Virus record (IMG/VR): IMGVR_UViG_3300030041_000009 | Location: 124,001 to 188,000 of that record | DNA: 64,000 nt | Direction: 5' to 3' (one strand) | Part shown: positions 1 to 59,021 of the stretch, piece by piece | Layout: each line of letters starts with the position of its first letter | How positions within the stretch are numbered: the stretch's first letter is position 1 | Notes under the pieces: generated by a model | Seen by the model: the letters and a program-made list of their open reading frames with translations, nothing else | Databases searched by the model: none | Told to the model about the DNA's origin: nothing | Translations under genes and position numbers: made by a program

Positions 1-137
1 ATTTTTATTATTATTATTTATTTGATGATGATGATAATTTAATATTATTTTGTGGTGAAGAAGATTTATATGAATATTTTTATACTAAACAAGAAGAAAG
101 AAAAAGAAAATTAGATAAAATAGAAAATTATGAATAA
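1..137 (+). CDS. Partial (5'-truncated) member of tandem paralog family, ends FYTKQEERKRKLDKIENYE
   Basis: Manual translation; same C-terminal block as the six downstream ORFs. Confidence 0.7.
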   Translation, partial: FYYYYLFDDDDNLILFCGEEDLYEYFYTKQEERKRKLDKIENYE

Positions 138-396
138 TTTTAATGATGGTGATAAAATATTATGTAAAAAGGATTTAACTTATTATGGTAACCATATTAT
201 AGAAGGTGATTATTATATTTTTCATGATAATATGTTTAGTGGTATTTTTAATGATTTTTACTGCTGTTATATAAGTGAATCTAATAATATATTTTCATAT
301 TATTTAACTGAACATGATTTAGTTGGTCATTTTTTTATGAAAAATGAGATTAGAAAATTAAAATTAGAAAAACTTTATGAAGAAACAGAATATTAA
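130..396 (+). CDS. Tandem paralog family protein (GDKxLCKK ... RKxKLEKL)
   Basis: Shared N- and C-terminal blocks with neighbours. Confidence 0.8.
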   Translation: MNNFNDGDKILCKKDLTYYGNHIIEGDYYIFHDNMFSGIFNDFYCCYISESNNIFSYYLTEHDLVGHFFMKNEIRKLKLEKLYEETEY

Positions 397-628
397 TGTA
401 GGAGATAGATTATTATGTAAAGAGGAGATTGATAAAATATTTATTAAAGATAAATATTATTATGTAGATGATATTAAAAATTTTTCAACTGATTATAGTG
501 AATATTTTTATGATTTAAGATCAGAATTCAATACAATATTACCATTTTTTAGTGAATCATATTTACATCAGTATTTTTATACTAAACAAGAAGAAAGAAA
601 AATCAAATTAGAAAAACTTTATGAATAA
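377..628 (+). CDS. Tandem paralog family protein
   Basis: NVGDRLLCK / FYTKQEERKIKLEKL. Confidence 0.8.
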   Translation: MKKQNINVGDRLLCKEEIDKIFIKDKYYYVDDIKNFSTDYSEYFYDLRSEFNTILPFFSESYLHQYFYTKQEERKIKLEKLYE

Positions 629-887
629 TTTTAATGAAGGTGATAAAATATTATGTAAAAAAGATTTAATAGCTAATTATAGTACACATTTTATAGAATG
701 TAAATATTATATTTATCATAAAATTCTGAATGATTCATTTAAAGGTTTTGCCTGCTGTATATTTAATGAATCTAATGGAATATATCCATATTTTTTAAAT
801 AAAAATGAATTACTAAATCATTTTTATACTAAACAAGAAGAGAGAAAAATTAAATTAGAAAAACTTTATGAAGAATCAGAATCTTAA
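621..887 (+). CDS. Tandem paralog family protein
   Basis: Close paralog of 130..396. Confidence 0.8.
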   Translation: MNNFNEGDKILCKKDLIANYSTHFIECKYYIYHKILNDSFKGFACCIFNESNGIYPYFLNKNELLNHFYTKQEERKIKLEKLYEESES

Positions 888-1140
888 TGTAGGTGATAAG
901 TTATTGTGTAAAAAAAATTTAAATGAATTATATGCAAGTTTTAATAAAAATAAATATTATATTGTTTATGATATTAAATTATTTGACAATAATACTGATT
1001 ATTGTTATTATATAGAATTTGATAAAAAAAAATATTATTCTTTTAGATATAGCGTTAGATTTTTTTATGAACATTTTTATACTAAACAAGAGGAGAGAAA
1101 AATAAAATTAGAAAAACTTTATGAAGAAACAGGATATTAA
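868..1140 (+). CDS. Tandem paralog family protein
   Basis: NVGDKLLCKK / FYTKQEERKIKLEKL. Confidence 0.8.
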   Translation: MKNQNLNVGDKLLCKKNLNELYASFNKNKYYIVYDIKLFDNNTDYCYYIEFDKKKYYSFRYSVRFFYEHFYTKQEERKIKLEKLYEETGY

Positions 1141-1387
1141 TGATGAAGATAAATTATTATGTAAAAAAAATCTTCTAGTTGGAGCAAATAAATATTTATA
1201 TGTTGATAATTATTATATTGTTATGGTAGTATACGGTCCTTATGAATATTGTTATTATTTTAATGATGAAAATGATAGAATATTACCATTTTCATTTAGC
1301 ATAAAAGAGATGTCTGAACATTTTTATACTAAACAAGAAGAAAGAAAAATTAAATTAGAAAAAATTTATGAAGAATCAGAATCTTAA
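1121..1387 (+). CDS. Tandem paralog family protein
   Basis: Same conserved termini. Confidence 0.8.
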   Translation: MKKQDINDEDKLLCKKNLLVGANKYLYVDNYYIVMVVYGPYEYCYYFNDENDRILPFSFSIKEMSEHFYTKQEERKIKLEKIYEESES

Positions 1388-1631
1388 TGTAGGAGATAAG
1401 TTATTATGTAAAAAAGATTTAACAACATCATATTCAATATATCATAAAGATAGATATTATATTGTTCATTTTATTATTAATTATGATGATGATTATCAGT
1501 ATTTGATATCTGATGATAAAAATGCTTATTCATCTTTTAAACGTGATGAAGAATATTTATATACTTATTTTTATAGAAAAAATGAGATTAGAAAAATTAA
1601 ATTGAAAAAATTGAATAATATTTTTAATTAA
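1368..1631 (+). CDS. Tandem paralog family protein
   Basis: Same conserved termini. Confidence 0.8.
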   Translation: MKNQNLNVGDKLLCKKDLTTSYSIYHKDRYYIVHFIINYDDDYQYLISDDKNAYSSFKRDEEYLYTYFYRKNEIRKIKLKKLNNIFN

Positions 1632-1656
1632 ATTAGGTTATACCAAATATTTACTT

Positions 1657-1696: not shown

Positions 1697-2770
1697 ATGA
1701 AAAAAGTAAAGAACATTTTATTTAAAATGGAATTAGAAGGTAATGGTGTTGTTAACTGTGATAGTAATGGACAAAAATGGATATGGAATGAAATTAGTGG
1801 TGGAAAGTATGAAACTGATAATAATTTAATATTTGCAAAAAAAAATATATATCAGAAAAGTAATGGTGAATATGATTATAAAATAAAAATTTCTAGTAAT
1901 TGTTTAAGACATAATATTTTTATTGATGATATTCCATTTCAATCTCCAAATATATTGCATAATAATTATTTACTTGTGTCAATGTTGGCTTCTCCTGCAA
2001 TTATAAATAGAGGTCATTTATTTGCATTGAATGAAGATGAGATTGATAAAACAATTAGAAGAAAAAGTGTTTTATGTATAATTGACGCTGAACAAACAAA
2101 TAATTGTAAATCAAAAATAGAACTTATGACAGTTAGTGGTGAAAAAATAAGTGATACTTCATTATTTAACAAAGAAACTGTAGGAGATATAACATATGAG
2201 ACTGATGGTAATATTGATTTAATGCAAATGCAATTTATTAGTTGTTCTAAAAATTTAGATCGATTAGCATTCAATCCAGATTTATTTCCTTTATATTCAG
2301 AATTATTGAAAAAAAGATTACCATCATTTAATTCGGAATTAAAATATTATAGGATTACAAATAGTGTTGTTGAATTACCAGAATATGGTTTTTTATTATC
2401 CAATACAGATGTTGTTGAACTAACAAAAAATCTATTATATAAAATGCTAAAAATGAATATTTATAAATCTGGATCTAGTGTTGTTACGTCTAAACTTAAA
2501 ATTAAATTAGTATATGACGTATTTAATGATAAAAAAAATAATTCTGATGGATGGATTGAATTAACAAAAGATGTTATAGATAATTTAAATTTTGAAAATG
2601 AAAATTTTTATACTGAATATGATTTTGAAAATGCAAAAACTTTAGATATAGAATTGTCAGATAAGAGATCTATTATAATTAAAAAAAGAATAGATGCTAA
2701 ATTGAAAGCTAAAGATGATAAAAAAGAAAAAAAAGAAGCTAAATTAAAATCTCAAAAAGAAGCTAAATAA
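1697..2770 (+). CDS. cas7: Cas7 backbone protein, type I-F2 (Cas7fv)-like
   Basis: Motifs GNGVVN, ISSNCLRHNIF, LAS-x4-RG, TSLFNKETVGD, QMQFISxxKxxDRxA, ExGxLL match the recalled Shewanella Cas7fv pattern; next to cas6 and array. Confidence 0.85.
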   Translation: MKKVKNILFKMELEGNGVVNCDSNGQKWIWNEISGGKYETDNNLIFAKKNIYQKSNGEYDYKIKISSNCLRHNIFIDDIPFQSPNILHNNYLLVSMLASPAIINRGHLFALNEDEIDKTIRRKSVLCIIDAEQTNNCKSKIELMTVSGEKISDTSLFNKETVGDITYETDGNIDLMQMQFISCSKNLDRLAFNPDLFPLYSELLKKRLPSFNSELKYYRITNSVVELPEYGFLLSNTDVVELTKNLLYKMLKMNIYKSGSSVVTSKLKIKLVYDVFNDKKNNSDGWIELTKDVIDNLNFENENFYTEYDFENAKTLDIELSDKRSIIIKKRIDAKLKAKDDKKEKKEAKLKSQKEAK

Positions 2771-2780
2771 TTCTAATAAT

Positions 2781-3680
2781 ATGGAATATTTTTTAAAATT
2801 GTCATTTAAAGATGCTGGATTTTTTGAAAAAGCAACTAATAATCAAAAACCTAGTATAAGTGTTCATCAAATAAGTAACATGCTGCATGTTTTAATGGGT
2901 GAACGTCCAAGTCCAACATATAGAGATACATTAATTAAACCTATATCAGATATATTTAATATAGCTAATTTAGCTTATATAAAAATAGATACAACAAGAT
3001 TTTTAAATAAATCTAGTGGTAAAATGTGTTATATGAATGAGTTTATACAAACAAATAAATTTGCTTATGATAGCTATAGAGATAAAAAAAGAAGTTTTAT
3101 TTATTGGGAAAATCTAGAATGTTATTTAACTACTGATCTATTTATAGAAATGATTAATTTATTTAATAATATATTAGGTTATGATGTTAAATCAAAACCT
3201 GCAATGTATATAATAAAAGAGATTATTACATATTATAGTAGTTCTAAATTAGTTATAGATATTAATAATGAAATAAAAAATAATAGCAAAATAAAATTTG
3301 CAAATTTCATTAAACAATATAATGATAATTCTGATTTTACAATTTTTTGTAAAAAATTAGTTAAAAATAATAAAACTCCAATTGCAAATCTTCTTATTGG
3401 TATTGTAAATCAATCAGCAATAACAATTGGTCAAAATCCAAAAACTACATTAACAAATATTAGAGGAATTGATAATATTACAAAAATTAGTGGTTCTATA
3501 ATAATTCCTTTAACATCAGAATATGTTGACAAAATTAAAAATTCAAAAGGTTGTGCAACGTTATTAGATGGAGGATTTGTTTGGATAGAAGATTTGATAA
3601 ATGAAGATGAAATGATTGAAAATGATTTAGATAGTTATATTAATATTAATAAATTAGAAGAATATGAGAATAAAAATTGA
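2781..3680 (+). CDS. cas5: Cas5, type I-F2 (Cas5fv)-like
   Basis: Between cas7 and cas6; MLHVLMGER and TKISGSIII..LLDGGFVWI resemble Cas5fv N- and C-terminal RRM elements; ~300 aa with central helical insert. Confidence 0.7.
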   Translation: MEYFLKLSFKDAGFFEKATNNQKPSISVHQISNMLHVLMGERPSPTYRDTLIKPISDIFNIANLAYIKIDTTRFLNKSSGKMCYMNEFIQTNKFAYDSYRDKKRSFIYWENLECYLTTDLFIEMINLFNNILGYDVKSKPAMYIIKEIITYYSSSKLVIDINNEIKNNSKIKFANFIKQYNDNSDFTIFCKKLVKNNKTPIANLLIGIVNQSAITIGQNPKTTLTNIRGIDNITKISGSIIIPLTSEYVDKIKNSKGCATLLDGGFVWIEDLINEDEMIENDLDSYININKLEEYENKN

Positions 3681-4368: not shown

Positions 4369-4469
4369 TAAAAATGAATAAATATAATGATATACGTATA
4401 TTAATAACTCATTTTTATTTATTAATATATACTATAAATAACTCAATATCAATTAATTATAAATATCCT
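4369..4469 (+). promoter_or_regulatory. AT-rich CRISPR leader
   Basis: Between cas6 and the first perfect repeat; repeat variants accumulate at the far end; contains TAATATATAC (4423-4432), like other putative phage promoters. Confidence 0.7.
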
Positions 4470-13519: not shown

Positions 13520-13888
13520 GTGTTGAAAAAAAATTTAAATAAAGATGAGAAAGAAATATATGATCTTGTTAAACGATTAAAATATGGTAGAATATCAGCA
13601 TTCACAACTAGAAATAAAAATAAAACAGAATTGATTGATTGGAGAATTTATCGTGATATCATAAATTCTGTAGTAATTGAAACTTGTTGTGGACGTTCGT
13701 GTATAAATAATAAACGTATATATTATGATATTAAATTTGTGTCTGAATATGATAATTATGGTAGTAAATTTTCAAATTTTGATATGATGTTAATTTATAT
13801 ATTAAATTGGTACAATGGGTGCATTGATGAATATATAACAATAATATCACGTAAGAAAAAATTAATTGAAATTGAAAAAGTAGAATAA
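13520..13888 (+). CDS. Hypothetical protein with C-terminal RKxKL tag
   Basis: ends SRKKKLIEIEKVE. Confidence 0.6.
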   Translation: MLKKNLNKDEKEIYDLVKRLKYGRISAFTTRNKNKTELIDWRIYRDIINSVVIETCCGRSCINNKRIYYDIKFVSEYDNYGSKFSNFDMMLIYILNWYNGCIDEYITIISRKKKLIEIEKVE

Positions 13889-14175: not shown

Positions 14176-14426
14176 TAATCTAAATCATTTGAATTTAATT
14201 TATCTATTTTGTCTTTTCTATCTTTTAATAAGAAATAATTATATTCATCTACAAATAATCTACAAGAATTATTATAGTCAACAATTTCATTAAAATATGG
14301 ACTATTTATATTATCACATGTTGTATGCTGATTATCTTGTTGATTACATTCTTTTAATATATCATCAAGAAATATTGATGTTTCTGAGTATTTTGAATAC
14401 ATGCAATTTAAACAATTATCATTCAT
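14172..14426 (-). CDS. Small Cys-rich protein with RKxKI tag
   Basis: CxxC...C; RKDKIDKL. Confidence 0.6.
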   Translation of the reverse strand: MNDNCLNCMYSKYSETSIFLDDILKECNQQDNQHTTCDNINSPYFNEIVDYNNSCRLFVDEYNYFLLKDRKDKIDKLNSNDLDY

Positions 14427-23128: not shown

Positions 23129-23731
23129 TTATTGATTTAATTTGTTAATTTTTCTTTTTCTTAATTCTTGTAATGTATCTAATTTAACTTCAACAGAATA
23201 ATCCATTGTAGATTTAGTAATAGATGAGTCTACTGTATAATTACTTTTATCTTTTTGATTTTTCCAGAATTCGTATCTTATAACTTGTAAAATATCATAA
23301 GCTTCTCTACATGTTTCATCAGTTTGTGGATTATAAATTCCAAAATCTCCATTATAAAAAGTGATATCTCCCGTAATTAAATATTTAATTTCTTTTAATT
23401 TTTTATCAATTTCATCACGAGTAAATTGCAATTTTGACCAATCTGGCGACATTTTTATATTTTTAATGTCATTCCAAGTTCTTATTTCATTTCCATTACC
23501 CCAACTACCTTCTGTTTTTATAAAATCTTCACCTATTTCAACTATTTTTCCTCTCATAGTATCATCACCAACTTCAAGAGTTTTTTTAACTGTAAATTGA
23601 TCAGTTATACATTTATCAATAGTTGGATGTGATACAATTTCATTTAGTTGTAAAATTCCAATTCTTGAATATAAATCTAAAGCCCTTTGAATTAAAGTAA
23701 GCTGTTTATTTGTTAATTTTATAGTTGCCAT
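23129..23731 (-). CDS. Hypothetical protein with RKxKI tag
   Basis: ends LRKRKINKLNQ. Confidence 0.7.
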   Translation of the reverse strand: MATIKLTNKQLTLIQRALDLYSRIGILQLNEIVSHPTIDKCITDQFTVKKTLEVGDDTMRGKIVEIGEDFIKTEGSWGNGNEIRTWNDIKNIKMSPDWSKLQFTRDEIDKKLKEIKYLITGDITFYNGDFGIYNPQTDETCREAYDILQVIRYEFWKNQKDKSNYTVDSSITKSTMDYSVEVKLDTLQELRKRKINKLNQ

Positions 23732-38360: not shown

Positions 38361-38662
38361 CTAATGATTTGTGTAGTACTATATGGAGAGATATTAAAGA
38401 TTTTGTAAATTCACATGAAAAATTCACAAGAAAAGATTTATATAAAAATGGTTTTTATACTACTGGAGAAAATTATATATTACTAATGAAACATGTTGGA
38501 TTTATAAATAAAGTTGGTATTGCGAAATATGAAAGAATAATTAAAATACCTGAATCATTATCATCAACTAAATTATATAATTTAGTTAAAAATAAATCAG
38601 AAGGATTAAAATATATGAGAAAATATAAGTTAGAAAATATAAAAAATCTTTACAAATTGTAA
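38354..38662 (+). CDS. Hypothetical protein with RKxKL tag
   Basis: MRKYKLENI near C-terminus. Confidence 0.6.
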   Translation: MVTNDLCSTIWRDIKDFVNSHEKFTRKDLYKNGFYTTGENYILLMKHVGFINKVGIAKYERIIKIPESLSSTKLYNLVKNKSEGLKYMRKYKLENIKNLYKL

Positions 38663-41018: not shown

Positions 41019-41274
41019 TATTAGATATTTCTTTTAATCTTTTTAATCTTTTATTTCGTATGAAAGCTGTTATATTTTTTTCTTCAATAACTTTAACTTC
41101 AGACCAGCAATTTGAGCACATATAATCACCTTCTAATTCATAACAACTATTATAAATTTTATTGCATTCTTTGCAATAATAGACATTATTTTCTTTTATT
41201 TCTCCAAACATTCTATGCATATTCATTAGTTTTTTATGATGTGCTGTTATTAGTTTTTCATGATGTGCTGTCAT
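41011..41274 (-). CDS. Zn-finger small protein with RxKRL tag
   Basis: CKEC..CSNC; N-terminal 24-bp tandem repeat. Confidence 0.6.
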   Translation of the reverse strand: MTAHHEKLITAHHKKLMNMHRMFGEIKENNVYYCKECNKIYNSCYELEGDYMCSNCWSEVKVIEEKNITAFIRNKRLKRLKEISNNE

Positions 41275-41281
41275 TAGTTTT

Positions 41282-41482
41282 TCATGATATATTATTATCT
41301 AAACTTCTAATATTTAATAATTTATTTTTTCTTTCTTTTTTCAGAAATGTATTTTTTATTGATAATGCTGTTTTAGGATTGACTATAATATAAGAAGAAT
41401 CATTAGAAATCATTATTTTATTATCTTCCATATATAAATCGCAATATATGATAATTCCAGGTAAAGTAAAAAAATTATACAT
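41282..41482 (-). CDS. Hypothetical protein with RKxKL tag
   Basis: ERKNKLLNI. Confidence 0.55.
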   Translation of the reverse strand: MYNFFTLPGIIIYCDLYMEDNKIMISNDSSYIIVNPKTALSIKNTFLKKERKNKLLNIRSLDNNIS

Positions 41483-41857: not shown

Positions 41858-42226
41858 TCAATTATTACAAATTTGTTTTAATTTTTCCAATTTTTCTTTC
41901 CGTTTTAAGATATTATAATCTATAAATTTATACATATTCCAATCAGGATAATCATTATAATCACTATAATTTCTACAATAAAATCTAAATTCAGTATAAT
42001 TATCATATCTTTCAACATCAATTAACGCAATTGTTTCTTTTTTATTTAATCCTTTTTGGAAATTTTTTAAAATATATTCTCTATTTTCAAAAAATCTATC
42101 ATGTTCAGATAAGGTTTTAGAAAAATCTATTTCTTTTGTTGCCATGTCAATAAAATCTAAAAAATTATTATATTTTTTACATATAATTGCAATATAATTA
42201 TATTGTAATGCTAGTTCTTTAATCAT
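41858..42226 (-). CDS. Hypothetical protein with RKxKL tag
   Basis: KRKEKLEKL. Confidence 0.65.
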   Translation of the reverse strand: MIKELALQYNYIAIICKKYNNFLDFIDMATKEIDFSKTLSEHDRFFENREYILKNFQKGLNKKETIALIDVERYDNYTEFRFYCRNYSDYNDYPDWNMYKFIDYNILKRKEKLEKLKQICNN

Positions 42227-42986: not shown

Positions 42987-43257
42987 TTATCTTTTTTAAT
43001 TTTTTTAATTTTTTCAAGCGTATAGTTTTAATATTATCAATTTTATATTCAGAATTATAATCCCAATTAGTATACGATAATAATATTCCAAATAAATGAA
43101 TATTTAAATCAAAACATATATCTTTTATATTTCCTTTTTTAGCACCATTTGTATAACATTTGAATTTGAAAAAATATTTTATATGAAAATTTATAGTTAT
43201 AGATTTACTACAATATATTTTTTTACTTCCTATTTTTTTATAAAACCATATTGTCAT
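42970..43257 (-). CDS. Hypothetical protein with RxKKL tag
   Basis: IRLKKLKKL. Confidence 0.6.
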   Translation of the reverse strand: MTIWFYKKIGSKKIYCSKSITINFHIKYFFKFKCYTNGAKKGNIKDICFDLNIHLFGILLSYTNWDYNSEYKIDNIKTIRLKKLKKLKKINDRNK

Positions 43258-43702
43258 TTAATTTAATTATTTTTTTCTTTCTGATAATTTTTTTACATAA
43301 TTCAATTTCATTCAAAAATATTTTATCTGGATTATTTATATCTCCATAGTATGAAGCAATATTTTTATCATTGATATAAATATACATAAATAGTGCATTA
43401 ACGTGAGTATAATCAAGTTCGAGTTTTAATATATCCTTATTATATAATGTGATATCATATTCAAAACTATCTTTTTTCTTAATTAATAAATAATTATATT
43501 TTTTACCAACCACAACAATATTATCATAATTTTCTGTAATAAAATAATTTTCACGTTTAGTTCTACATTTAGAATTTGTATATATTCTAAAGGTATAGCC
43601 AGTACCATTTTTAATATAAGATTCATAAATAAAATATTCTATATTTTCTATTTTGATTGAATATTTATTTTCTACAATTTCAAGTTTAAAATCTTTAATC
43701 AT
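43238..43702 (-). CDS. Hypothetical protein with RKxKI tag
   Basis: IRKKKIIKL. Confidence 0.6.
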   Translation of the reverse strand: MIKDFKLEIVENKYSIKIENIEYFIYESYIKNGTGYTFRIYTNSKCRTKRENYFITENYDNIVVVGKKYNYLLIKKKDSFEYDITLYNKDILKLELDYTHVNALFMYIYINDKNIASYYGDINNPDKIFLNEIELCKKIIRKKKIIKLNDNMVL

Positions 43703-44549
43703 TTATGCTATCATTTATTTTTTTAATTTTTTCACGTCGATAATATGATATGTCTTTTGTATCTATTACTAAAAATTGATTTTCTGCAGAACCACCAATA
43801 GTTTCAATTGAATAATACATTTCATATGTTATATTATATGGAGTTTCAATTTTGTTAAATATTATATTTTTATTATTATCTGAATATATAAAGCAATGAA
43901 CTCCATTATTATCTATTGAATTTTTTCTACCTAGAATAATATAATTTTCTTTAATTGAATTAACTATTTCATATTTAATATTATTTATATCATAAATATA
44001 TTTGTTTATACAATTATGAGTTTTATAATTTGAAATATAAAAATTAGGATGACCATATCTACCTTTTGTTGTTATATAATTACTAGCACTTATAATTCTA
44101 GAACAAATATTATTTTTTATTTTTTTTTGTTTATCATTAGGTAATTCTTGATTATATTTTTTTTCTATTTTATCTATAATAATATCAAAGTAATCATCAT
44201 TTTTTGAATCTAATTTTAAATTTTCTCTATTTTTATTACCTAATTCTAAAATTATAGGTATAAATTTATTTTTTAGTTCATTAATTATACCAGATTTTAA
44301 ATATTTAGTTATTTGTTCTTCATTATATTTTTTATTTATATCAAATGTTAATTTTATAAGATTTATAGTTTTACTACAAAGATTTACACTTAGATTTGGA
44401 TATGACATCCTAGTTAAACTAGCTGGAGTAGTCATAGGATTTACATAATTTTGCATATCTATATAATTAATCTCGCATTTTAAATTATTTACAGGAGATA
44501 TAGAGAATAAATCATTATCTAGTTCTGATATATTAATTATTGGATTCAT
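43695..44549 (-). CDS. Hypothetical protein with RxxKI tag
   Basis: RREKIKKI. Confidence 0.65.
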   Translation of the reverse strand: MNPIINISELDNDLFSISPVNNLKCEINYIDMQNYVNPMTTPASLTRMSYPNLSVNLCSKTINLIKLTFDINKKYNEEQITKYLKSGIINELKNKFIPIILELGNKNRENLKLDSKNDDYFDIIIDKIEKKYNQELPNDKQKKIKNNICSRIISASNYITTKGRYGHPNFYISNYKTHNCINKYIYDINNIKYEIVNSIKENYIILGRKNSIDNNGVHCFIYSDNNKNIIFNKIETPYNITYEMYYSIETIGGSAENQFLVIDTKDISYYRREKIKKINDSIND

Positions 44550-44796
44550 AGTATTGGTTTAATATTTTTAATTTATATTTTCTAAATATTTTATTATGTG
44601 TTAATATAGATAATAAATATTCGGCATATAAAAATACTGTAGAATCATAATTATTTTTATTAGAAATTATATTATTAATATATTTTAATGCTTCATTATA
44701 TTTAGATTCTGAAAAATTTATAAATTTAGATTCTATTGCATCACTAAAATATTCAGCATATTTTTCTAATTTTTGAACTACATTATTATCTTTCAT
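44533..44796 (-). CDS. Hypothetical protein with RKxKL tag
   Basis: FRKYKLKIL. Confidence 0.6.
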   Translation of the reverse strand: MKDNNVVQKLEKYAEYFSDAIESKFINFSESKYNEALKYINNIISNKNNYDSTVFLYAEYLLSILTHNKIFRKYKLKILNQYYESNN

Positions 44797-48235: not shown

Positions 48236-48238
48236 ATT

Positions 48239-49013: not shown

Positions 49014-49349
49014 TTATAGTTCTTTTAATTTTAATAATTTGTATTTACGAAATCCATTTTTCCAAGTATCATAACTTAATTCAACTCCATTCAAATAATA
49101 TTTTTTATTAATAATTATTTCATTATCTTTTTTATATAATATAGATGGTCCGAAATCATTATGAAATGCATTATTTTTATAATATGATATTTCAATATTA
49201 TTATTTAATTCATGTATTATTTTCACATATTTATATTTTTGTATAAATTTAGTAATAAATTTAACATCATCTTTATCTATAGAATTAAATTTTAATGAAT
49301 GATATTCTATTTCATGCTCTATTACTATATCTGATTTGTGGTTATTCAT
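49014..49349 (-). CDS. Protein with HxxxGPS/YYLNG unit and RKxKL tag
   Basis: FHNDFGPSI..YYLNG; FRKYKLLKL. Confidence 0.65.
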   Translation of the reverse strand: MNNHKSDIVIEHEIEYHSLKFNSIDKDDVKFITKFIQKYKYVKIIHELNNNIEISYYKNNAFHNDFGPSILYKKDNEIIINKKYYLNGVELSYDTWKNGFRKYKLLKLKEL

Positions 49350-50206: not shown

Positions 50207-50485
50207 CTAACTTTTTTCTAACTCAGATAGTTTTTCTAATTTTTTCTTTCTTTCTTCATTTAAAAAACAAAAATAGTCATAAAAATAATATTCATTATCA
50301 CCTATAAAATCATCAACATATGTCATAGATTTATTTAATCTAAATCTAAATACCAAATGTTCATTATCTTCAATTGATATAAAATCATCTTTATCAAATA
50401 CTGAATAAATGTTATTAATAATATAATATTTATTTTTTTCAAATTGATAAAAATTATTTTTACAATGAGCTTTCATTAATTTCAT
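50207..50485 (-). CDS. Relative of the 130-1631 family with RKxKL tag
   Basis: CKNNF..KNKYY..FYDYF..ERKKKLEKL. Confidence 0.65.
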   Translation of the reverse strand: MKLMKAHCKNNFYQFEKNKYYIINNIYSVFDKDDFISIEDNEHLVFRFRLNKSMTYVDDFIGDNEYYFYDYFCFLNEERKKKLEKLSELEKS

Positions 50486-50723
50486 TTATTTTTTCCTTTC
50501 TTAAAAAATTATTTATTCCATAAATTTTATTAATATCTTTTACTGTTAAGCATTTTAATTCTGATTTTTCTTCATCACCCCATTCTTCTACACAAATATA
50601 ATATTTTTCCCAACTAGATTTGAAAATATAAAGTACTAAACTATTATATTTATCAATATACTTATGTAGATTTGATGAATTATCAACCTCATTAAAATTA
50701 TATTTTAAAAATTTTTGACTCAT
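50460..50723 (-). CDS. Hypothetical protein with RKxKI tag
   Basis: LRKEKINEI. Confidence 0.6.
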   Translation of the reverse strand: MSQKFLKYNFNEVDNSSNLHKYIDKYNSLVLYIFKSSWEKYYICVEEWGDEEKSELKCLTVKDINKIYGINNFLRKEKINEINESSL

Positions 50724-51201: not shown

Positions 51202-51600
51202 TTAATATTTTTTATATTTTAATTTAATAAGTTTTTTTTTACGAAACTTTTTTTTTGACTCAGTTATAAAATCTAATTGACTTTGATATGGCTCGTCATT
51301 ATATCCTTCGTTCCAATTAATTGAATCTGGATCAACTTTTATATAATCTAAAAAATCTTGCATACTAAAATTATCCATTGAAGTTTCACCAAATATAAAA
51401 TCATTATAATCAACTATTCTCCATGGATCAGTATCACAATATTCGAATTTATCTATACATATTTCATCAATAGTTTTAAAAAACTCAACATAACTTTGAT
51501 AATCATAAATCATTTCTTTTTGTTTATTAGTTAAAGAATCTTTAATTACTACAAAACTGCTTGATGATGAGTTACTTACAAATCCATTTCGTATTTTCAT
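51202..51600 (-). CDS. MKIRxGFVSNSSSSSF family protein
   Basis: Characteristic N-terminal motif; RKKKL tag. Confidence 0.75.
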   Translation of the reverse strand: MKIRNGFVSNSSSSSFVVIKDSLTNKQKEMIYDYQSYVEFFKTIDEICIDKFEYCDTDPWRIVDYNDFIFGETSMDNFSMQDFLDYIKVDPDSINWNEGYNDEPYQSQLDFITESKKKFRKKKLIKLKYKKY

Positions 51601-53434: not shown

Positions 53435-53452
53435 AAAATTATATATATTATT

Positions 53453-54835: not shown

Positions 54836-54840
54836 AAATT

Positions 54841-55203
54841 ATGAAACACTTAAAAATATTTGAAGAATTTGACGATGATGACGAATTATCACCAGTAGGA
54901 CATTATACATCTCAACATGTAGGAGATTATGTAAAATTAGAAGATTATGTAAAATTAGATGATTCTGAAAGTGAATTGAATGTTGTAGGTCCATTTGTTA
55001 AAATTATTGAAGTTAACGATACAGATTTTGATGAAAATGATGATGATATGTATGAGCCAAGATATAAAGTAATATCTATTCATAAAAAGACAAGAGAATT
55101 AAAAGAATTTTGGATAGGTGAAAGTGAGATTGATAGAGATTTAACTTCAAGTGAAATTGAAGAACTTGAACTATTATTAACAGCAAACAAATTTAATATG
55201 TAA
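54841..55203 (+). CDS. Dual-tag family protein
   Basis: MKHLKIFEEF ... NKFNM. Confidence 0.75.
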   Translation: MKHLKIFEEFDDDDELSPVGHYTSQHVGDYVKLEDYVKLDDSESELNVVGPFVKIIEVNDTDFDENDDDMYEPRYKVISIHKKTRELKEFWIGESEIDRDLTSSEIEELELLLTANKFNM

Positions 55204-55207
55204 AACT

Positions 55208-55732
55208 ATGAAACATTTAAAAATATTTGAAGAATTTGACGATGATGAAGATTTCGAAGAATATCATGATATTAATGAATTTGAAAATGATTACGATATA
55301 GATACTGCTGTTGATAGCTATATAACAGCATTAATTTGGACTGAAGAAGGTCATGAAACAGATTATGATCCATGGGAAGGAAAAAATATATATGATATCG
55401 ATGAAAATTCTAAAGATGAGATTGTAAAAGAAGTTGAATGGTTTATTAATTCAGCAGGAGATGTTTTTGAAGATATGACAGATGACCAAATTGGTAATGA
55501 TTTATGGTTGACAAGAAATGGACATGGATCTGGATTTTTTGAAAGAATAAATGATAGTGAAAACTTAACAATCATTACTAAATTATGTGATGTTTTAGGA
55601 AATGTAGATGCTGAAATAGGAGATGATGGTAATATATATCATCATTCAAATGATAAATATAAAACTTTTAATGTAGATGAATATAAAAAGAAAATAGAAT
55701 TTGATAAAACAGTAAATAAATTTAATTTATAA
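55208..55732 (+). CDS. Dual-tag acidic protein with GxDxWLTRNGHGxGF motif
   Basis: MKHLKIFEEF ... NKFNL; motif recalled from phage proteins of unknown function. Confidence 0.75.
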   Translation: MKHLKIFEEFDDDEDFEEYHDINEFENDYDIDTAVDSYITALIWTEEGHETDYDPWEGKNIYDIDENSKDEIVKEVEWFINSAGDVFEDMTDDQIGNDLWLTRNGHGSGFFERINDSENLTIITKLCDVLGNVDAEIGDDGNIYHHSNDKYKTFNVDEYKKKIEFDKTVNKFNL

Positions 55733-55756
55733 CATATTTTAAAAAAATAATATCTT

Positions 55757-56002
55757 ATGAAAAATGCTAAATACATAGAAAAAAATCCTAAATATAAGAA
55801 AGGAGATTTCGTTAAGTTGATTGAGAATAATTTGAAAGTTGAAAATTTAGTACATATTTTAGATGTAAATGATGAGTTAAAATCACCAGATTATTATATT
55901 GAAGCATTTAATATTAAAACTCAAGAAATAGTTAAAATATGGATCGATGAAGAAGAAATAGATAAAAAAACCAATGCAAAAGGAAAAATAAAATTTAAAT
56001 AA
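55757..56002 (+). CDS. Hypothetical protein related to 54841..55203
   Basis: GDFVKL..WIDEEEID. Confidence 0.6.
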   Translation: MKNAKYIEKNPKYKKGDFVKLIENNLKVENLVHILDVNDELKSPDYYIEAFNIKTQEIVKIWIDEEEIDKKTNAKGKIKFK

Positions 56003-56003
56003 A

Positions 56004-56414
56004 TTGAAATATATTAAAAAGTTTGAAAAATCAAATAGTAAAGAGAAAATTCAAGAACTCGCTTATTATATACATAATTTTATAAATAAAAATCAAAATG
56101 AAATTATTTATTCATATGAATATAATTGTGATTATGCGTTTAGTTATAATAAAAATGATATACAAAGAAATTATTTTTTAAATTTAAGATTATCCACAAA
56201 TAATGATTATTTTTTGTTTGATATTAATACTATACTAGATAATCCAGGATGGATAGATTCAGAAATAGAAAAAATATCAAAATTTATAAAATATATAATG
56301 GATAAATATTCAGAATTAGGTAGAATAAAAATCACAGAAATAGATAATATTATAAATGATATATCAAAAGAAAATTACGAAATTTATCTAAATGCATTAA
56401 AATTTAATTTATAA
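56004..56414 (+). CDS. Dual-tag family protein (TTG start)
   Basis: MKYIKKFE ... LKFNL. Confidence 0.7.
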   Translation: MKYIKKFEKSNSKEKIQELAYYIHNFINKNQNEIIYSYEYNCDYAFSYNKNDIQRNYFLNLRLSTNNDYFLFDINTILDNPGWIDSEIEKISKFIKYIMDKYSELGRIKITEIDNIINDISKENYEIYLNALKFNL

Positions 56415-56479
56415 AAAAAGAGAATCAATTGATTCTCTTTTTTGTTATTTAAGGTTCATTAAATCTCACTATTTTATCT

Positions 56480-57088
56480 TTATTTTTGGAAAAGATTATC
56501 CTTTACATTATTTTCGGTATAATAAGTCGTTGCAGCAGAAATATTTGAATATGCTACTATTATTCCGTCATTCGTAGCATCATAATTAAATGAATTGCTT
56601 CTACTCATTCCCATTGATTCTGCGACAAAACATGAATCTTGATTTGCACCTAAATAAATAAATTCAATATTTAAATTTTCTCTCATATCTGTCACCATTA
56701 ATTTAATCATATCACGACTATATATAGTAGAAGAATTTTCTTCTCCGTCTGTTAATATAACAAATAATGTTTTATCACTTCTTTTACTTTTTTTAGTTGA
56801 TCCTAGTTGCTTTATATAATTATCTGAAGCAAATCCTAACGCATCATATAAACTAGTACCACCATTAGCATAATAAGTGTTTTCATTAAGTTCATTTACT
56901 TCTTTAATGTCAACGTTTTTATATGGCATATAAAAACTTGTATCAAAAAACATCAATGAAAAATTTATTTTATTTCCATTTTCCTTTTGTTCCGTTAAGA
57001 ATTTGTTAAATCCTTCTCTCGCTTTTACTATTATCGACCCCATTGAGCCAGACATATCCAATATGCAAACTATATCTACCTTATTCAT
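56480..57088 (-). CDS. von Willebrand factor A domain protein
   Basis: MIDAS DMSGSM, GGTSLYDA, ILTDGEENSS. Confidence 0.9.
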   Translation of the reverse strand: MNKVDIVCILDMSGSMGSIIVKAREGFNKFLTEQKENGNKINFSLMFFDTSFYMPYKNVDIKEVNELNENTYYANGGTSLYDALGFASDNYIKQLGSTKKSKRSDKTLFVILTDGEENSSTIYSRDMIKLMVTDMRENLNIEFIYLGANQDSCFVAESMGMSRSNSFNYDATNDGIIVAYSNISAATTYYTENNVKDNLFQK

Positions 57089-57096
57089 ATTATAAA

Positions 57097-57984
57097 TTAA
57101 ATTTTAGTTCCGCATTTCGGACAGAATTTCCAAGAACTTTTTCTTAAACGATATCCGCACTCATTACAATATTCACGTATCTCATTGATACTCTGAGATT
57201 TAGAAGAATAAGGCATAAGTTTATAAGATATTGAATAGAATGATGTATTTGAAAATTCGACGTTTACATTTTTTAATTTTTGATCTGATAATTCTCCTTT
57301 TTCAACTCTACCAGTTTCAATAGAATTAATATTTAAACTAGATGTAAATGTTGATCCTCCAATATTACTTGATGAATTAAATATATTATTATTTAATGAA
57401 TTGCAACTTTGAGTATAAACACAACTAGTATCTGAATTATATTTAGAATTAGAATTATTAGTATCAAAAAATCCAGAAAAACTTATAGAATTTCCAGTTA
57501 ATGATGTTATTGAAGAATTTCCAAAATAATTTCCATAATATGTTCCAGTGTTATTAAGATTATTATAATTATAAGGCTTAGGTGGAAATTCATAATTTAC
57601 ATTTACTTCATTAGTATTATTACTTCTCCAATATTCTTTATAGAAATTAAAGGTAATTAATCCATTTTTTTCAATCGCTTCTAACGCTTCTTTATTATTA
57701 CCATCAATGTTATAAGTTTCAAATAACATTTTACGTTGTTCATCTAAAAACCGATCTAAAAATACATTTTGACCAGGATTTAAAATTAAATAAGAATCTC
57801 CTTTTTTGATTCCGTTAAATTCGATACTAACTCCAATTTTTTCATTTGTTGGATTGAAAAAATTAAGTTCAAAGTTATCACCATTATTTAAGTAAATAAT
57901 GTTACCTTGATAAATTTTCAATTCGTTTCTTTTGCTAGAAATTTGAACAGAAGGGTTCCTGTCCAACAGTTTGTTGTTTGTCAT
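57097..57984 (-). CDS. Hypothetical protein with C-terminal double Zn ribbon
   Basis: YCNECG..FCPKCG; co-oriented with vWA gene. Confidence 0.75.
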   Translation of the reverse strand: MTNNKLLDRNPSVQISSKRNELKIYQGNIIYLNNGDNFELNFFNPTNEKIGVSIEFNGIKKGDSYLILNPGQNVFLDRFLDEQRKMLFETYNIDGNNKEALEAIEKNGLITFNFYKEYWRSNNTNEVNVNYEFPPKPYNYNNLNNTGTYYGNYFGNSSITSLTGNSISFSGFFDTNNSNSKYNSDTSCVYTQSCNSLNNNIFNSSSNIGGSTFTSSLNINSIETGRVEKGELSDQKLKNVNVEFSNTSFYSISYKLMPYSSKSQSINEIREYCNECGYRLRKSSWKFCPKCGTKI

Positions 57985-58217
57985 AATTTTTTTATTTTTT
58001 TTATTTTTAGTTTGCTAATTCATTCATTGCTTTTCAACAATTCCAAAGTCATAATGACTCTAAACTAACATAACCCAAAAAATGAACCTCGTCACTTTAA
58101 GTGCGACATTATTATATATATTTTTATTGCTGTCCTATTATATTAAATATTATTAATTTTTATATTATATTCAATTTTTATTTGTATCTTTGCACATTAA
58201 CTTTAAATACTAATAAT

Positions 58218-58487
58218 ATGAATAGATTTTTAAGATATAAAGAAACTAAATTATATAATCATTTGATTAATTCAATAGATTATCATGAAAAAAGACGTCT
58301 TAAACAAAAAAATGAACATGATGCAATTCAAGTAAAATTGAAGAAATATGAGGAAAAACAAATTGAACGTGATAACGTAATATCTGAACCTAAAGATTCT
58401 AAATTGATAAATAATGAAATTGATAAAATTTCAGAAGAAGAATATTATCAAATTTATTTAAAATTAAAAAATAGTTATGAAAAATAA
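58218..58487 (+). CDS. Hypothetical protein (probable start MNRFLRY)
   Basis: TATCTTTGCA box at ~58185 upstream. Confidence 0.6.
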   Translation: MNRFLRYKETKLYNHLINSIDYHEKRRLKQKNEHDAIQVKLKKYEEKQIERDNVISEPKDSKLINNEIDKISEEEYYQIYLKLKNSYEK

Positions 58488-58668
58488 AACAATGTATATT
58501 TTTAGCATTATTATAGGCATGATTATAAGTAAAATTGCTATTTTTATAAATATAAAAGCATATTCTTTTGAATGGTGGAGATTCTGCTTAACATTTGATA
58601 TTATAATAATTGTAAGTTTTTTTTATATAGTTGAATTAATAATAAAAAATAAAAAACCTAAAAAATGA
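58477..58668 (+). CDS. Small membrane protein
   Basis: Two hydrophobic segments. Confidence 0.55.
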   Translation: MKNKTMYIFSIIIGMIISKIAIFINIKAYSFEWWRFCLTFDIIIIVSFFYIVELIIKNKKPKK

Positions 58669-59021
58669 AAGATTTAAAAAATATAACCAAAGAAGAAGTT
58701 GAAATAATATGCGAAATGTACGGTGAGCCATTTATTGATTATCTTGCAGGTGAATGGAATTATGGATTAGCAGTTCAAATTAATACAACATCAACTGCAT
58801 ATAATAATGTGAATGATTCTTATATCACAATATATTATAATGGTATTATTAACTTACATAGAAACAATGGCAATTGGGGCGGAATGATAACTGAAAGTAT
58901 ATCTCCTTTAATAGCAATAGATTATTTGAGAAGTCAAGGTTACGAATTCAAATATGAAATTCCTAAACAATTAGAAAGAAAATTCAAATTAAACGAATTA
59001 AATAAAATATCTAAAATATAA
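58665..59021 (+). CDS. Hypothetical protein with RKxKL tag
   Basis: ERKFKLNEL. Confidence 0.65.
   Translation: MKDLKNITKEEVEIICEMYGEPFIDYLAGEWNYGLAVQINTTSTAYNNVNDSYITIYYNGIINLHRNNGNWGGMITESISPLIAIDYLRSQGYEFKYEIPKQLERKFKLNELNKISKI

What the first reader, a model, noticed from the sequence alone, without database searches (positions are those of the whole stretch)
130..59021. Second, mutually exclusive tag: basic R(K)xK(L/I)xx(L/I) helix on more than 20 small proteins
Seen near the C-terminus of the six ORFs at 130-1631 and of 13520, 14172, 23129, 38354, 41011, 41282, 41858, 42970, 43238, 43695, 44533, 49014, 50207, 50460, 51202 and 58665. None of these has the MK..FE/KFN tags. Inference: a second address label for a non-virion protein class (shared partner, localisation signal or degron), so the phage may sort its accessory proteome with two peptide codes.
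Basis: partly seen in the sequence, partly recalled or inferred. Interest (0 to 1): 0.6.

Follow-up and report, generated by a model that had tools for sequence, protein, structure and literature searches.

The report
C-terminal basic helix tag, huge phage
About one gene in five of this huge, very AT-rich phage ends in the same short basic helix (R-K-x-K-L-x-x-L), a real, detachable peptide label shared by otherwise unrelated proteins and conserved in related giant phages, whose binding partner and purpose are still unknown.

Summary
All 22 named ORFs, plus a truncated one at 3-137, carry R[KRN]x[KR][LI]xx[LI] near the C-terminus. In the 214.5-kb genome, 77 ORFs do, against 0.6 expected from shuffles, and only 5 copies are internal. 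An unbiased scan ranks it the most C-terminally enriched pattern (p about 1e-80).

The constraint is on the peptide, not the DNA: synonymous codons at R, K and L match the genome background. With the tag removed, the bearers fall into 50 BLAST-unrelated clusters.

In two conserved families the tag is a detachable appendage of about 15 residues, present in one clade and absent at the exact end of the core in others. Tag-bearing genomes have many tagged genes; genomes with untagged orthologues had none.

A 636-kb relative has 65 tagged genes with a concerted variant (Ile instead of Leu at position 4). Two other huge phages lack it but have their own C-terminal peptides.

AlphaFold models the tag as a terminal helix. 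It is too hydrophilic to bind membranes. Tags 1 and 2 never co-occur (0 against 13.3 expected).

The best reading is a lineage-specific docking helix for one shared partner. The partner, and whether the outcome is turnover, localisation or assembly, is unknown. No precedent was found.

The parts
99..122 (+). Tag copy RKRKLDKI in the 5'-truncated ORF 3-137 (88-aa array family).
352..375 (+). Tag RKLKLEKL in ORF 130-396 (88 aa; SH3-like array family)
596..619 (+). Tag RKIKLEKL in ORF 377-628 (83 aa)
843..866 (+). Tag RKIKLEKL in ORF 621-887 (88 aa). AlphaFold model: six strands plus the tag helix at residues 71-87.
1096..1119 (+). Tag RKIKLEKL in ORF 868-1140 (90 aa)
1343..1366 (+). Tag RKIKLEKI in ORF 1121-1387 (88 aa)
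1590..1613 (+). Tag RKIKLKKL in ORF 1368-1631 (87 aa), the last gene of the array. The next gene is 66 nt downstream.
13850..13873 (+). Tag RKKKLIEI in ORF 13520-13888 (122 aa)
14196..14219 (-). Tag RKDKIDKL in ORF 14172-14426 (84 aa). Convergent gene end, with no downstream same-strand start.
23138..23161 (-). Tag RKRKINKL in ORF 23129-23731 (200 aa), a conserved family in which the tag is a clade-specific appendage after the core. AlphaFold: linker at residues 158-186, tag helix at 187-199.
38618..38641 (+). Tag RKYKLENI in ORF 38354-38662 (102 aa). Convergent gene end.
41035..41058 (-). Tag RNKRLKRL in ORF 41011-41274 (87 aa)
41309..41332 (-). Tag RKNKLLNI in ORF 41282-41482 (66 aa)
41879..41902 (-). 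Tag RKEKLEKL in ORF 41858-42226 (122 aa)
42997..43020 (-). Near-variant RLKKLKKL in ORF 42970-43257 (95 aa), with Leu in place of Lys at position 1
43259..43282 (-). Tag RKKKIIKL in ORF 43238-43702 (154 aa)
43716..43739 (-). Tag RREKIKKI in ORF 43695-44549 (284 aa). The tag is kept in homologues down to 37% identity and is absent from the 28% homologue, which ends where the tag would begin.
44560..44583 (-). Tag RKYKLKIL in ORF 44533-44796 (87 aa)
49026..49049 (-). Tag RKYKLLKL in ORF 49014-49349 (111 aa). Convergent gene end.
50228..50251 (-). Tag RKKKLEKL in ORF 50207-50485 (92 aa)
50478..50501 (-). Tag RKEKINEI in ORF 50460-50723 (87 aa)
51220..51243 (-). Tag RKKKLIKL in ORF 51202-51600 (132 aa)
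58977..59000 (+). Tag RKFKLNEL in ORF 58665-59021 (118 aa)

Best explanation
Shown: tag 2 is a real, modular C-terminal peptide selected at the amino-acid level.
- It is a helix of about 15-18 residues, often opened by a T-x-x-E capping box after an aromatic residue.
- Its invariant residues R0, K3, L/I4 and L/I7 lie on one helical face, with K1 beside it. A short dispensable tail follows.
- It is appended to at least 50 sequence-unrelated protein families, about 19-22% of the genes. Most are small, fast-evolving ORFans in tandem arrays of overlapping genes.
- It occurs in one sub-lineage of Mahaphage-like huge phages, whose translation and promoter signals look Bacteroidota-like.

Inferred: the helix is a docking motif, an address label. 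Through it, many different accessory proteins engage one common partner, encoded by the phage or the host. The label and the partner co-evolve, which would explain why every copy in a genome shifts together (Leu to Ile at position 4, Lys to Arg/Lys at position 3 in the 636-kb relative).

Not determined: what docking achieves. The leading options are timed turnover through a Clp-type unfoldase or adaptor, or recruitment to a site or assembly. The bearers look like early, non-virion genes, but only on promoter-motif evidence.
For: Enrichment and directionality:
- 77 ORFs carry the motif against 0.6 expected; 5 copies are internal; 4 occur in reversed sequences.
- It is the top de novo C-terminal pattern.

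Peptide-level constraint:
- Arg is encoded by CGN in 17% of copies against 16% background.
- Leu is encoded by CTN in 19% against 19%; Lys AAG use is at background. Leu/Ile interchange is tolerated, and the x positions vary freely.

Diversity of bearers:
- 50 BLAST clusters once the tag is removed.
- 42 of 77 have neither the SH3-type N-terminus nor the F-x-T context.
- No Pfam or PHROG family is shared.

Modularity:
- In the 200-aa family the core ends at ..KV.LD. 53 of 113 members continue with [IL]RK.K[LI].K[LI] and the rest stop there.
- Tag state needs only 4 changes on the core tree, against about 38 when labels are shuffled.
- The 284-aa family keeps the tag to 37% identity and loses it cleanly at 28%.

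Genome-level all-or-none pattern:
- 7 of 56 and 5 of 46 genes are tagged near tagged orthologues; 0 of 41 and 0 of 44 near untagged ones.
- LR756504 has 65 tagged genes of 984, against 1.4 expected.
- LR756501 and LR756500 are at chance.

Concerted variant: position 4 is Ile in 64 of 65 copies in LR756504, against Leu in 68 of 77 here.

Only conserved part: no tagged protein has a LR756504 homologue outside the tag.

Independent recovery: 96 representatives among 1.84 billion proteins match the module, essentially all at the extreme C-terminus of 44-150-aa proteins.

Structure: terminal helix at residues 71-87 after an SH3-like barrel, and helix at 187-199 after a 28-residue linker on an unrelated core.

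Exclusivity with tag 1: 0 against 13.3 expected.
Against: - No partner was identified. A rough phylogenetic profile gave only enzymes and unknowns.
- Clp genes occur in tag-positive LR756504, but also next to an untagged orthologue.
- The concerted variants and the all-or-none pattern could also come from spread of one module by duplication and recombination within each lineage.
- About a third of the bearers are one expanded family in which the helix may simply be part of the fold.
- In 48 of 71 cases the next gene's ATG lies -1 to +17 nt after the motif, so a role in translational coupling is not excluded.
- The all-or-none test rests on only four 20-kb neighbourhoods and four genomes.
- The early-expression inference rests on a degenerate promoter box.
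Confidence: 0.5

Rival explanations
1. Common descent plus recombination. The helix is the last structural element of one hugely expanded, fast-diverging family: an SH3-like barrel plus terminal helix, perhaps derived from the 2B/C-terminal end of an SF1B helicase. It is simply the only part still recognisable. Its presence on other proteins would reflect 3'-end capture by recombination among abundant overlapping genes, with no shared partner required.
For: - 25 of 77 bearers here and 60 of 96 global hits start with the G[DE]x-h-x-C pattern of the SH3-like family.
- Tandem arrays of 14-18 paralogues occur here, in L016 and in L052.
- The AlphaFold model is a barrel plus helix.
- Atlas neighbours are annotated SH3_13 + UvrD_C_2, and the RecD2 2B domain is the top VIA row.
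- The helicase motif VI sequence LIYTGLTRAKKL looks similar.
Against: - 42 of 77 bearers have neither family hallmark.
- In the 200-aa and 284-aa families the tag follows a linker on unrelated cores and is kept under selection across about 50 diverged members.
- Drift in one family does not explain why one helical face stays invariant while everything else decays, nor why Leu to Ile changes genome-wide.
- The helicase link failed hhalign (probability 0.08).
- The structural Z of 5.3 is tied with ordinary SH3 domains.
Confidence: 0.2
2. Degron. This is a specific form of docking: the helix is recognised by a Clp-type unfoldase or its adaptor, from the phage or the host, so that early accessory proteins are removed on schedule.
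For: - The complete relative LR756504 encodes three ClpP homologues and two Clp-type AAA+ ATPases.
- The tag is C-terminal, basic plus aliphatic, and loosely like the MuA C-motif-2 degron ...NRRKKAI used in PMC12723719.
- The bearers look like early, disposable ORFans.
Against: - Known ClpX degrons are unstructured and sit at the very end of the protein. This tag is helical, with a variable tail of 1-12 residues.
- Clp genes also occur in a lineage whose orthologue lacks the tag.
- None was found in this 30%-complete fragment.
- No degradation data exist.
Confidence: 0.15
3. Self-association. The tags bind one another, pairing a basic N-half with an acidic tail in antiparallel fashion, and knit many small proteins into hetero-oligomers.
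For: - The N-half of the helix is basic, and the tail is often acidic (YEESES, NEISN...).
- Concerted variation would also follow from self-complementarity.
Against: - Conserved like-charged residues R0 and K3 share the face with L4 and L7, and there is no heptad pattern.
- In LR756504 the acidic tail is mostly missing, with tails of 0-4 residues.
- There is no positive evidence of any kind.
Confidence: 0.07
4. Translation-level role. The nascent peptide in the exit tunnel, or the A-rich RNA that encodes it, controls termination and re-initiation at the overlapping start of the next gene.
For: - In 48 of 71 cases the next ATG starts -1 to +17 nt after the L7 codon, most often with 1 nt between them.
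- 36 of 71 overlaps are 11-29 nt, against 19 of 196 for untagged genes.
- The phage has no Shine-Dalgarno sequences and uses A-rich leaders.
Against: - 21 of 76 bearers have no start within 30 nt, 5 of them convergent, yet keep the motif and a tail.
- The distance to the stop codon varies from 0 to 16 residues across genomes.
- The invariant Arg uses both AGA and CGN, whereas leaders are G-depleted.
- 170 genes preceded closely by untagged genes manage without it.
- The capping box and linker argue for a folded helix.
Confidence: 0.06
5. DNA-level signal (promoter, terminator or recombination cassette) or a by-product of Lys/Ile/Leu-rich composition.
For: The genome is 22% GC, and K, I, N and L are its commonest residues. 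The motif lies at gene junctions.
Against: - Shuffles give 0.6 against 77 observed.
- The motif is frame- and strand-specific: 77 in frame against 2 antisense.
- Synonymous codon usage is at background.
- The similarly AT-rich LR756500 lacks it.
Confidence: 0.02

Closest known systems
Capsid targeting sequence (CTS) of phage T4 internal proteins
   Same: A short conserved peptide is the only thing shared by a highly diverse, fast-evolving set of phage accessory proteins. It addresses them to one destination (PMC3012670; PMC10229621).
   Different: The CTS is N-terminal, 10 residues long, cleaved by the prohead protease gp21, and marks late, packaged proteins. Tag 2 is a C-terminal helix with no evidence of cleavage or packaging, and it sits in units without the late-like TATATATAA box. 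Tag 1's N-terminus resembles the CTS idea more closely than tag 2 does.
ClpX C-motif-2 degron (MuA C-terminus, ...NRRKKAI)
   Same: A C-terminal cluster of basic residues followed by aliphatic ones, acting as a transferable recognition signal (PMC12723719).
   Different: The degron is unstructured and lies at the very end of the protein. The tag has fixed i/i+3/i+4/i+7 spacing, is predicted helical, and is followed by 1-12 further residues. No degradation test was possible.
Membrane-targeting amphipathic helices (MinD and FtsA C-termini)
   Same: A C-terminal helix mixing basic and hydrophobic residues. This comparison rests on established knowledge, not on a tool result.
   Different: The tag is far too polar: mean Eisenberg hydrophobicity -0.46 and hydrophobic moment 0.19, with only two conserved aliphatic residues.
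C-terminal end of SF1B (RecD/Dda-type) helicases: SH3-like 2B domain plus motif VI ([LF]YTA[IL]TRA[KR]..L)
   Same: An SH3-like barrel followed by a Y-T-x-x-x-R-basic-x-x-L helix. Atlas neighbours are annotated SH3_13 + UvrD_C_2, and RecD2 is the top VIA row. The helicase in L055 reads LIYTGLTRAKKL.
   Different: There is no profile similarity (hhalign probability 0.08). The Z of 5.3 is tied with ordinary SH3 domains. The register of the Arg differs by one residue. The tag also occurs on proteins without the barrel.
Classical monopartite nuclear localisation signal, K-[KR]-x-[KR]
   Same: R-K-x-K fits the consensus. This comparison rests on established knowledge, not on a tool result.
   Different: The element is a tailed-phage genome with a gp32-like SSB, CRISPR-Cas and Bacteroidota-type initiation signals, so there is no nucleus to target. 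The conserved Leu/Ile at +4 and +7 are not part of an NLS.
Other terminal peptides of huge phages found here: [KN]RTKL[IM]DKMLNE and DPYGEE[DN]W in LR756501; NADDFGF[FL]DN in LR756500
   Same: Lineage-specific C-terminal peptides shared by 10-17 or more otherwise different proteins. The RTKL peptide is also a basic helix on small, tandem, overlapping genes.
   Different: The sequences differ, and none has been described or tested. They are peers of tag 2, not explanations for it.

Membership tests
T4-type capsid targeting sequence | Located at the N-terminus of the precursor protein | tested here: not met
   The motif starts 9-20 residues from the C-terminus. Only 1 copy lies in the first 25 residues.
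T4-type capsid targeting sequence | Removed by the prohead protease at an [LI]-x-E site; bearer is packaged in the head | not testable with these tools
   There are no virion proteomics for this uncultured phage. [LI]-x-E occurs around some copies (L-N-E after L7; L-K-E before R0), but not consistently.
ClpX C-motif-2 (MuA-like) degron | Basic-aliphatic signal at the extreme, unstructured C-terminus | tested here: not met
   A tail of 1-12 residues follows the motif, and AlphaFold predicts a helix.
ClpX C-motif-2 (MuA-like) degron | Confers ClpXP-dependent degradation when transferred to a reporter | not testable with these tools
   This needs an assay. Clp genes are present in LR756504, but also in an untagged lineage.
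Membrane-targeting amphipathic helix (MinD/FtsA type) | High hydrophobic moment with a substantial apolar face | tested here: not met
   Mean hydrophobicity -0.46, hydrophobic moment 0.19, net charge +3.1.
SF1B helicase C-terminal module (SH3_13 + UvrD_C_2) | Significant sequence or profile similarity to the Pfam families or to a helicase C-terminus | tested here: not met
   No Pfam hit for any of the 77 bearers. hhalign against the RecD2-like helicase of L055 gave probability 0.08. No helicase appeared in the PDB profile search.
SF1B helicase C-terminal module (SH3_13 + UvrD_C_2) | Structural match standing clearly above generic SH3 domains | tested here: inconclusive
   RecD2 2B scores Z 5.3 and TraI TSA Z 5.0, tied with ordinary SH3 domains. 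Atlas TM scores are 0.58-0.61.
DNA-level junction cassette (promoter, terminator or recombination site, as with T4 PeSL elements) | Conservation at the nucleotide level, independent of frame and strand, with suppressed synonymous variation | tested here: not met
   Synonymous codons are at background. The motif is in-frame and strand-specific: 77 in frame against 2 antisense.
Single paralogous protein family | Detectable homology between bearers outside the motif | tested here: not met
   There are 50 BLAST clusters after tag removal. The largest has 14 members, and 42 are singletons. Remote homology between small, fast-evolving proteins cannot be fully excluded.
Short helical docking motif shared by diverse proteins (address label) | Transferable: present or absent at a domain boundary within one orthologous family | tested here: met
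   Shown in the 200-aa and 284-aa families.
Short helical docking motif shared by diverse proteins (address label) | A defined common binding partner | not testable with these tools
   No candidate emerged from profiling.

The most novel reading that the evidence does not exclude
Mahaphage-type huge phages run a previously unrecognised protein-sorting system. Each lineage uses a small set of terminal peptide codes: here the RKxKLxxL helix and the MKYIKTFE...NKFN[LI] pair; elsewhere RTKLIDKMLNE, DPYGEENW and NADDFGFFDN. Dedicated receptors would read these codes to route a third or more of the accessory proteome to different fates, such as early cytoplasmic hub or turnover versus capsid. The codes and receptors would co-evolve and be replaced between lineages.
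Probability: 0.3. Interest if true: 0.9.

Novelty: new variant of a known kind. Interest (0 to 1): 0.72.

Why it matters
Huge phages carry hundreds of small ORFan genes that nobody can annotate. One fifth of them here share a detachable, conserved C-terminal helix, and sister lineages use other terminal peptides. This gives a handle on those genes. The tag can serve as bait to find the hub these proteins converge on, as a classifier to split the accessory proteome into functional or temporal classes, and perhaps as a portable targeting or turnover signal for engineering. It also warns annotators that the most conserved part of these proteins is a label and not a catalytic domain.

Tried and rejected
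- **Family scans:** Pfam and PHROGs on all 77 bearers found nothing shared.
- **PDB profile search:** only a sub-threshold resemblance to the H-Ras alpha5 helix (E = 0.057), taken as coincidence.
- **Foldseek against the PDB, both models:** no match at E <= 0.001. One model shows a generic SH3 or chromo-barrel and the other nothing.
- **VIA wide search:** Z about 5, tied across several fold types.
- **Helicase-origin lead:** hhalign was negative.
- **Complex prediction:** two copies of the 88-aa protein gave 'no answer' (score 0.01 against a mark of 0.42). This counts neither for nor against binding.
- **Clp machinery as the specific partner:** present in LR756504, but also in an untagged lineage, and not found in this incomplete fragment, so it does not discriminate.
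- **Phylogenetic profile for a partner** (shared by the two tag-positive genomes, absent from the two tag-negative samples): 15 candidates, consisting of enzymes and unknowns with no hub-like protein. The genomes are too incomplete for this to mean much.
- **Module profile built from this genome (A1):** it found only 4 of the 65 LR756504 copies, and none in LR756501 or LR756500, because it is too lineage-specific.
- **Literature searches** for the motif strings and for huge-phage terminal motifs: no precedent.
- **Megablast of 12 kb of the window against GenBank phages:** no match.
- **AU test for monophyly of tagged members of the 200-aa family:** did not finish in the time allowed.
- **Not used:** Read laying, the look-up of sequencing runs and alternative genetic codes.

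Full report
**What the window is**

The window is the minus strand of positions 65,980-129,979 of a single 214,510-bp viral contig with 22% GC. CheckV rates the contig about 30% complete.

It encodes a gp32-like single-strand DNA-binding protein. The closest relatives of that protein are the 460-735-kb 'uncultured phage' genomes LR756500-LR756504, at 32-47% identity. Al-Shayeb et al. 2020 place all genomes larger than 634 kb in the Mahaphage clade and predict that they replicate in Bacteroidetes (PMC7162821).

The signals in this genome fit that host prediction:
- There is no Shine-Dalgarno sequence. Only 1-4% of leaders contain GGA, GAG or AGG.
- G is depleted upstream of start codons, and an A-rich tract lies at -17 to -9.
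- TAnnTTTG boxes are mildly enriched in intergenic DNA.

A 23rd copy sits in the truncated ORF at 3-137.

Genome-wide, 77 ORFs carry the strict pattern R[KRN]x[KR][LI]xx[LI] in their last 25 residues. The controls are as follows:
- Shuffling the last 25 residues of every protein gives a mean of 0.59 (maximum 5 in 1000 shuffles).
- Shuffling only the bearers' own tails, the most conservative control, gives 0.32.
- There are only 5 internal copies, 4 copies in reversed sequences, and 1 copy in the first 25 residues.
- A scan that knows nothing of the motif, covering all gapped four-residue patterns in a reduced alphabet, puts '++.+l' and '+..+l..l' at the top of the C-terminally enriched list: 79-96 proteins against 3.5-7.6 expected, p about 1e-74 to 1e-80.
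- LR756500, at 24% GC, has one hit against 0.5 expected, so AT-richness alone does not produce the motif.

Tag 1 and tag 2 never share a protein: 0 against 13.3 expected, P = 8e-8.

**It is a peptide signal, not a DNA signal**

At the invariant Arg, 63 codons are AGA, 13 are CGN and 1 is AGG. That is 17% CGN against 16% in the genome. Leu is CTN in 19% of copies against 19% background, and Lys AAG use is at background. Leu and Ile interchange, and whole codons at the x positions vary freely. The motif is in frame in 77 cases and antisense in 2.

In 48 of the 71 bearers with a same-strand downstream neighbour, that neighbour's ATG starts -1 to +17 nt after the last motif codon. The most common arrangement is L7 codon, one base, then ATG. 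Overlaps of 11-29 nt are typical for bearers: 36 of 71, against 19 of 196 for untagged genes. The preference for [NY]-E after L7 is simply nATGAA read in another frame.

So much of the 'tail' is overlap with the next gene. The A-rich initiation region could favour Lys codons there. It cannot explain an invariant Arg encoded by both AGA and CGN in a G-depleted leader. It also cannot explain the 21 of 76 bearers, 5 of them convergent, that have no start within 30 nt yet keep both the motif and a tail of 2-12 residues.

**Anatomy of the tag**

Anchored on R0, the consensus is [YF]-F-[IY]-T-x-[KQ]-E-x-R-K-x-K-L-x-K-[LI], followed by 1-12 mostly polar or acidic residues.

T-x-x-E is a helix capping box; this reading rests on established knowledge of helix N-caps. 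At 100 degrees per residue, R0, K3, L4 and L7 fall on one helical face and K1 lies beside it. This follows directly from the sequence.

AlphaFold2 gives two models:
- For the 88-aa family (32-sequence alignment, pLDDT 81.6): six strands, a short helix, and the tag as a terminal helix at residues 71-87.
- For the unrelated 200-aa protein (pLDDT 89): a helical and beta core, a 28-residue linker, and the tag as helix 187-199 at lower confidence.

The helix is very polar: mean hydrophobicity -0.46, hydrophobic moment 0.19, net charge about +3. That rules out a membrane anchor of the MinD or FtsA type.

**One family or many**

With the tag and the 10 residues before it removed, the 77 bearers fall into 50 BLAST clusters. 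The largest has 14 members and 42 are singletons. No Pfam or PHROG family is shared.

About a third (25 of 77) share an N-terminal G[DE]x-h-x-C pattern and belong to an SH3-like barrel family. That family forms tandem arrays here and also:
- in a sister phage (L016, 18 copies);
- in an unrelated AT-rich contig (L052, at least 15 copies).

Forty-two bearers have neither that N-terminus nor the F-x-T context.

**The tag is modular**

The 200-aa protein at 23129-23731 belongs to a well-conserved family with 198 homologues at 50-70% identity. The core ends at ..KV.LD. Of 113 members examined, 53 continue with T[IL]KD[IL]RK.K[LI].K[LI] and the others stop at the end of the core or carry a different extension. 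On a tree built from the core alone, tag state needs 4 changes, against about 38 for shuffled labels.

The 284-aa protein at 43695-44549 keeps YRREKIKKIN in homologues down to 37% identity. There the tag is the best-conserved stretch. The 28% homologue ends exactly where the tag would begin.

**The tag is a property of genomes**

- The 20-kb neighbourhoods of two tagged orthologues hold 7 of 56 and 5 of 46 tagged genes. Those of two untagged orthologues hold 0 of 41 and 0 of 44.
- The complete 636-kb genome LR756504 has 65 tagged genes of 984, against 1.4 expected.
- In LR756504 the variant is concerted. Position 4 is Ile in 64 of 65 copies (Leu in 68 of 77 here), position 3 is split between Arg and Lys (Lys in 76 of 77 here), and the tails are only 0-4 residues.
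- No tagged protein of this genome has an LR756504 homologue outside the tag, although 40 untagged proteins do.
- A profile of the module, searched against 1.84 billion representative proteins, returned 96 hits at E <= 0.001. Nearly all are 44-150 aa with the match at the extreme C-terminus, which the search did not require.

**Other lineages have other tags**

LR756501 (400 kb sampled) and LR756500 (400 kb sampled) lack tag 2. They show their own C-terminal peptides:
- DPYGEE[DN]W on at least 17 proteins in LR756501.
- [KN]RTKL[IM]DKMLNE on at least 10 small, tandem, overlapping genes in LR756501. This is a basic helix that looks like a cousin of tag 2.
- NADDFGF[FL]DN on at least 13 proteins in LR756500. 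These proteins begin with MKYIKEYEEF, the N-terminal half of tag 1.

**Interpretation**

The following points are shown:
- The peptide is real and selected as protein.
- It is helical in the models.
- It is modular.
- It is attached to many unrelated proteins.
- It is mutually exclusive with tag 1.
- It is conserved and varies in concert across a sub-lineage of huge phages.

The inference is that it is a docking helix for one shared partner. That best explains four facts together: one invariant helical face on otherwise unconstrained proteins, the all-or-none pattern across genomes, the concerted change of consensus, and the replacement by other peptides in other lineages. I put this at about 0.5.

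What docking achieves is open. A Clp-type degron or adaptor signal is attractive because LR756504 encodes three ClpP homologues and two Clp ATPases. But Clp genes also sit beside an untagged orthologue, and known ClpX degrons are terminal and unstructured.

Motif-based promoter evidence places tag 2 in units headed by host-type boxes: 13 tag-2 and 0 tag-1 genes. It places tag 1 behind TATATATAA boxes, which are 56% intergenic and lie 13-25 nt before the ATG: 45 tag-1 and 9 tag-2 genes in the units they head, and never directly before a tag-2 gene. The host-type box is degenerate, so this evidence is weak.

The rivals are:
- a family remnant spread by recombination;
- tag-tag assembly;
- a nascent-chain or RNA role in coupling overlapping genes;
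- a DNA signal or compositional artefact, which the controls refute.

**Comparison with known systems**

[quoted passage not shown] The CTS is a 10-residue N-terminal peptide cleaved by gp21 (PMC10229621). Tag 2 shares that logic but not the position, the sequence or, apparently, the timing.

It fails the defining features of MuA-type ClpX degrons, membrane-targeting helices, helicase C-termini and DNA cassettes, as set out in the membership table. Three literature searches found no description of this motif or of terminal-peptide classes in huge phages.

**Verdict**

This is a confirmed and statistically overwhelming feature. Its nature as a modular peptide label is well supported, and its mechanism is not. 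I rate it a new variant of a known kind (phage peptide address labels), with a realistic chance that it is part of something broader and new.

Noticed in passing
window 1697-9294: A phage-borne type I CRISPR-Cas locus: Cas7fv-like (1697-2770), a 299-aa ORF (2781-3680), Cas6 (3664-4368), a CRISPR array of about 38 repeats with a 66-nt period (about 4404-6900), and Cas3 (6997-9294). The tagged 88-aa gene array lies directly upstream of the cas operon here and also in the sister phage L016, whose cas genes are of a different subtype (Cas6, Cas7, Cas5d, Cas3).
   Followed up: partly
window, about 45 genes, e.g. 45455-48898, 52985-56414, 60460-63998; also L080-L096 (LR756500) and L060-L077 (LR756501): Tag 1 (MKYIKTFE...NKFN[LI]) splits into two halves with different histories. 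The N-terminal half recurs in LR756500 on proteins ending NADDFGF[FL]DN, and more loosely in LR756501 on proteins ending DPYGEE[DN]W. The C-terminal half is lineage-specific and absent from LR756504. To me the N-terminal half resembles the T4 capsid targeting sequence; the T4 sequence is recalled from memory and was not verified. Tag-1 units are headed by late-like TATATATAA boxes.
   Followed up: partly
L067:2496-3697 and L076:12951-13729 (LR756501): Small tandem genes with 11-17-nt overlaps end in [KN]RTKL[IM]DKMLNE. This basic helix looks like a diverged cousin of tag 2 in a genome that lacks the strict motif.
   Followed up: no
whole genome; window intergenic regions: There are no Shine-Dalgarno sequences. 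G is depleted and A enriched at -17 to -9 before start codons. A TATATATAA box is 56% intergenic (the genome is 8.6% intergenic) and lies a tight 13-25 nt before the ATG, which makes it a likely phage-specific promoter.
   Followed up: partly
L054:7467-12944: In a lineage whose orthologue lacks the tag, the 200-aa family gene sits between ClpP, SmpB and an M28 peptidase on one side and a 760-aa Clp/Hsp100-type ATPase on the other. This hints that the family may relate to protein quality control.
   Followed up: no
window 40197-41018 and 42219-42986: Two DNA methyltransferases (a D12-class Dam-like enzyme and an N6_N4 methylase) are interleaved with the run of tagged genes at 41011-44796.
   Followed up: no
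window 33285-33638 and 18345-18896: ORFs with Thr-rich low-complexity C-terminal repeats (TTTTTTTNAPTTTTTTTHAP...; TTVPVKV...).
   Followed up: no
P0008, P0011, P0061, P0071 (metagenomic proteins): Some relatives carry two tags in one protein. These appear to be fusions of adjacent array genes, which shows how easily the overlapping junctions read through.
   Followed up: no
window 621-887 model (mbd369014ac79): The nearest structural neighbours of the beta domain of the 88-aa family include the RecD2 2B SH3 domain and the RecD-like translocation-signal domain of relaxase TraI (Z about 5). Helicase motif VI (LIYTGLTRAKKL in L055) resembles the extended tag. The profile comparison was negative.
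   Followed up: yes
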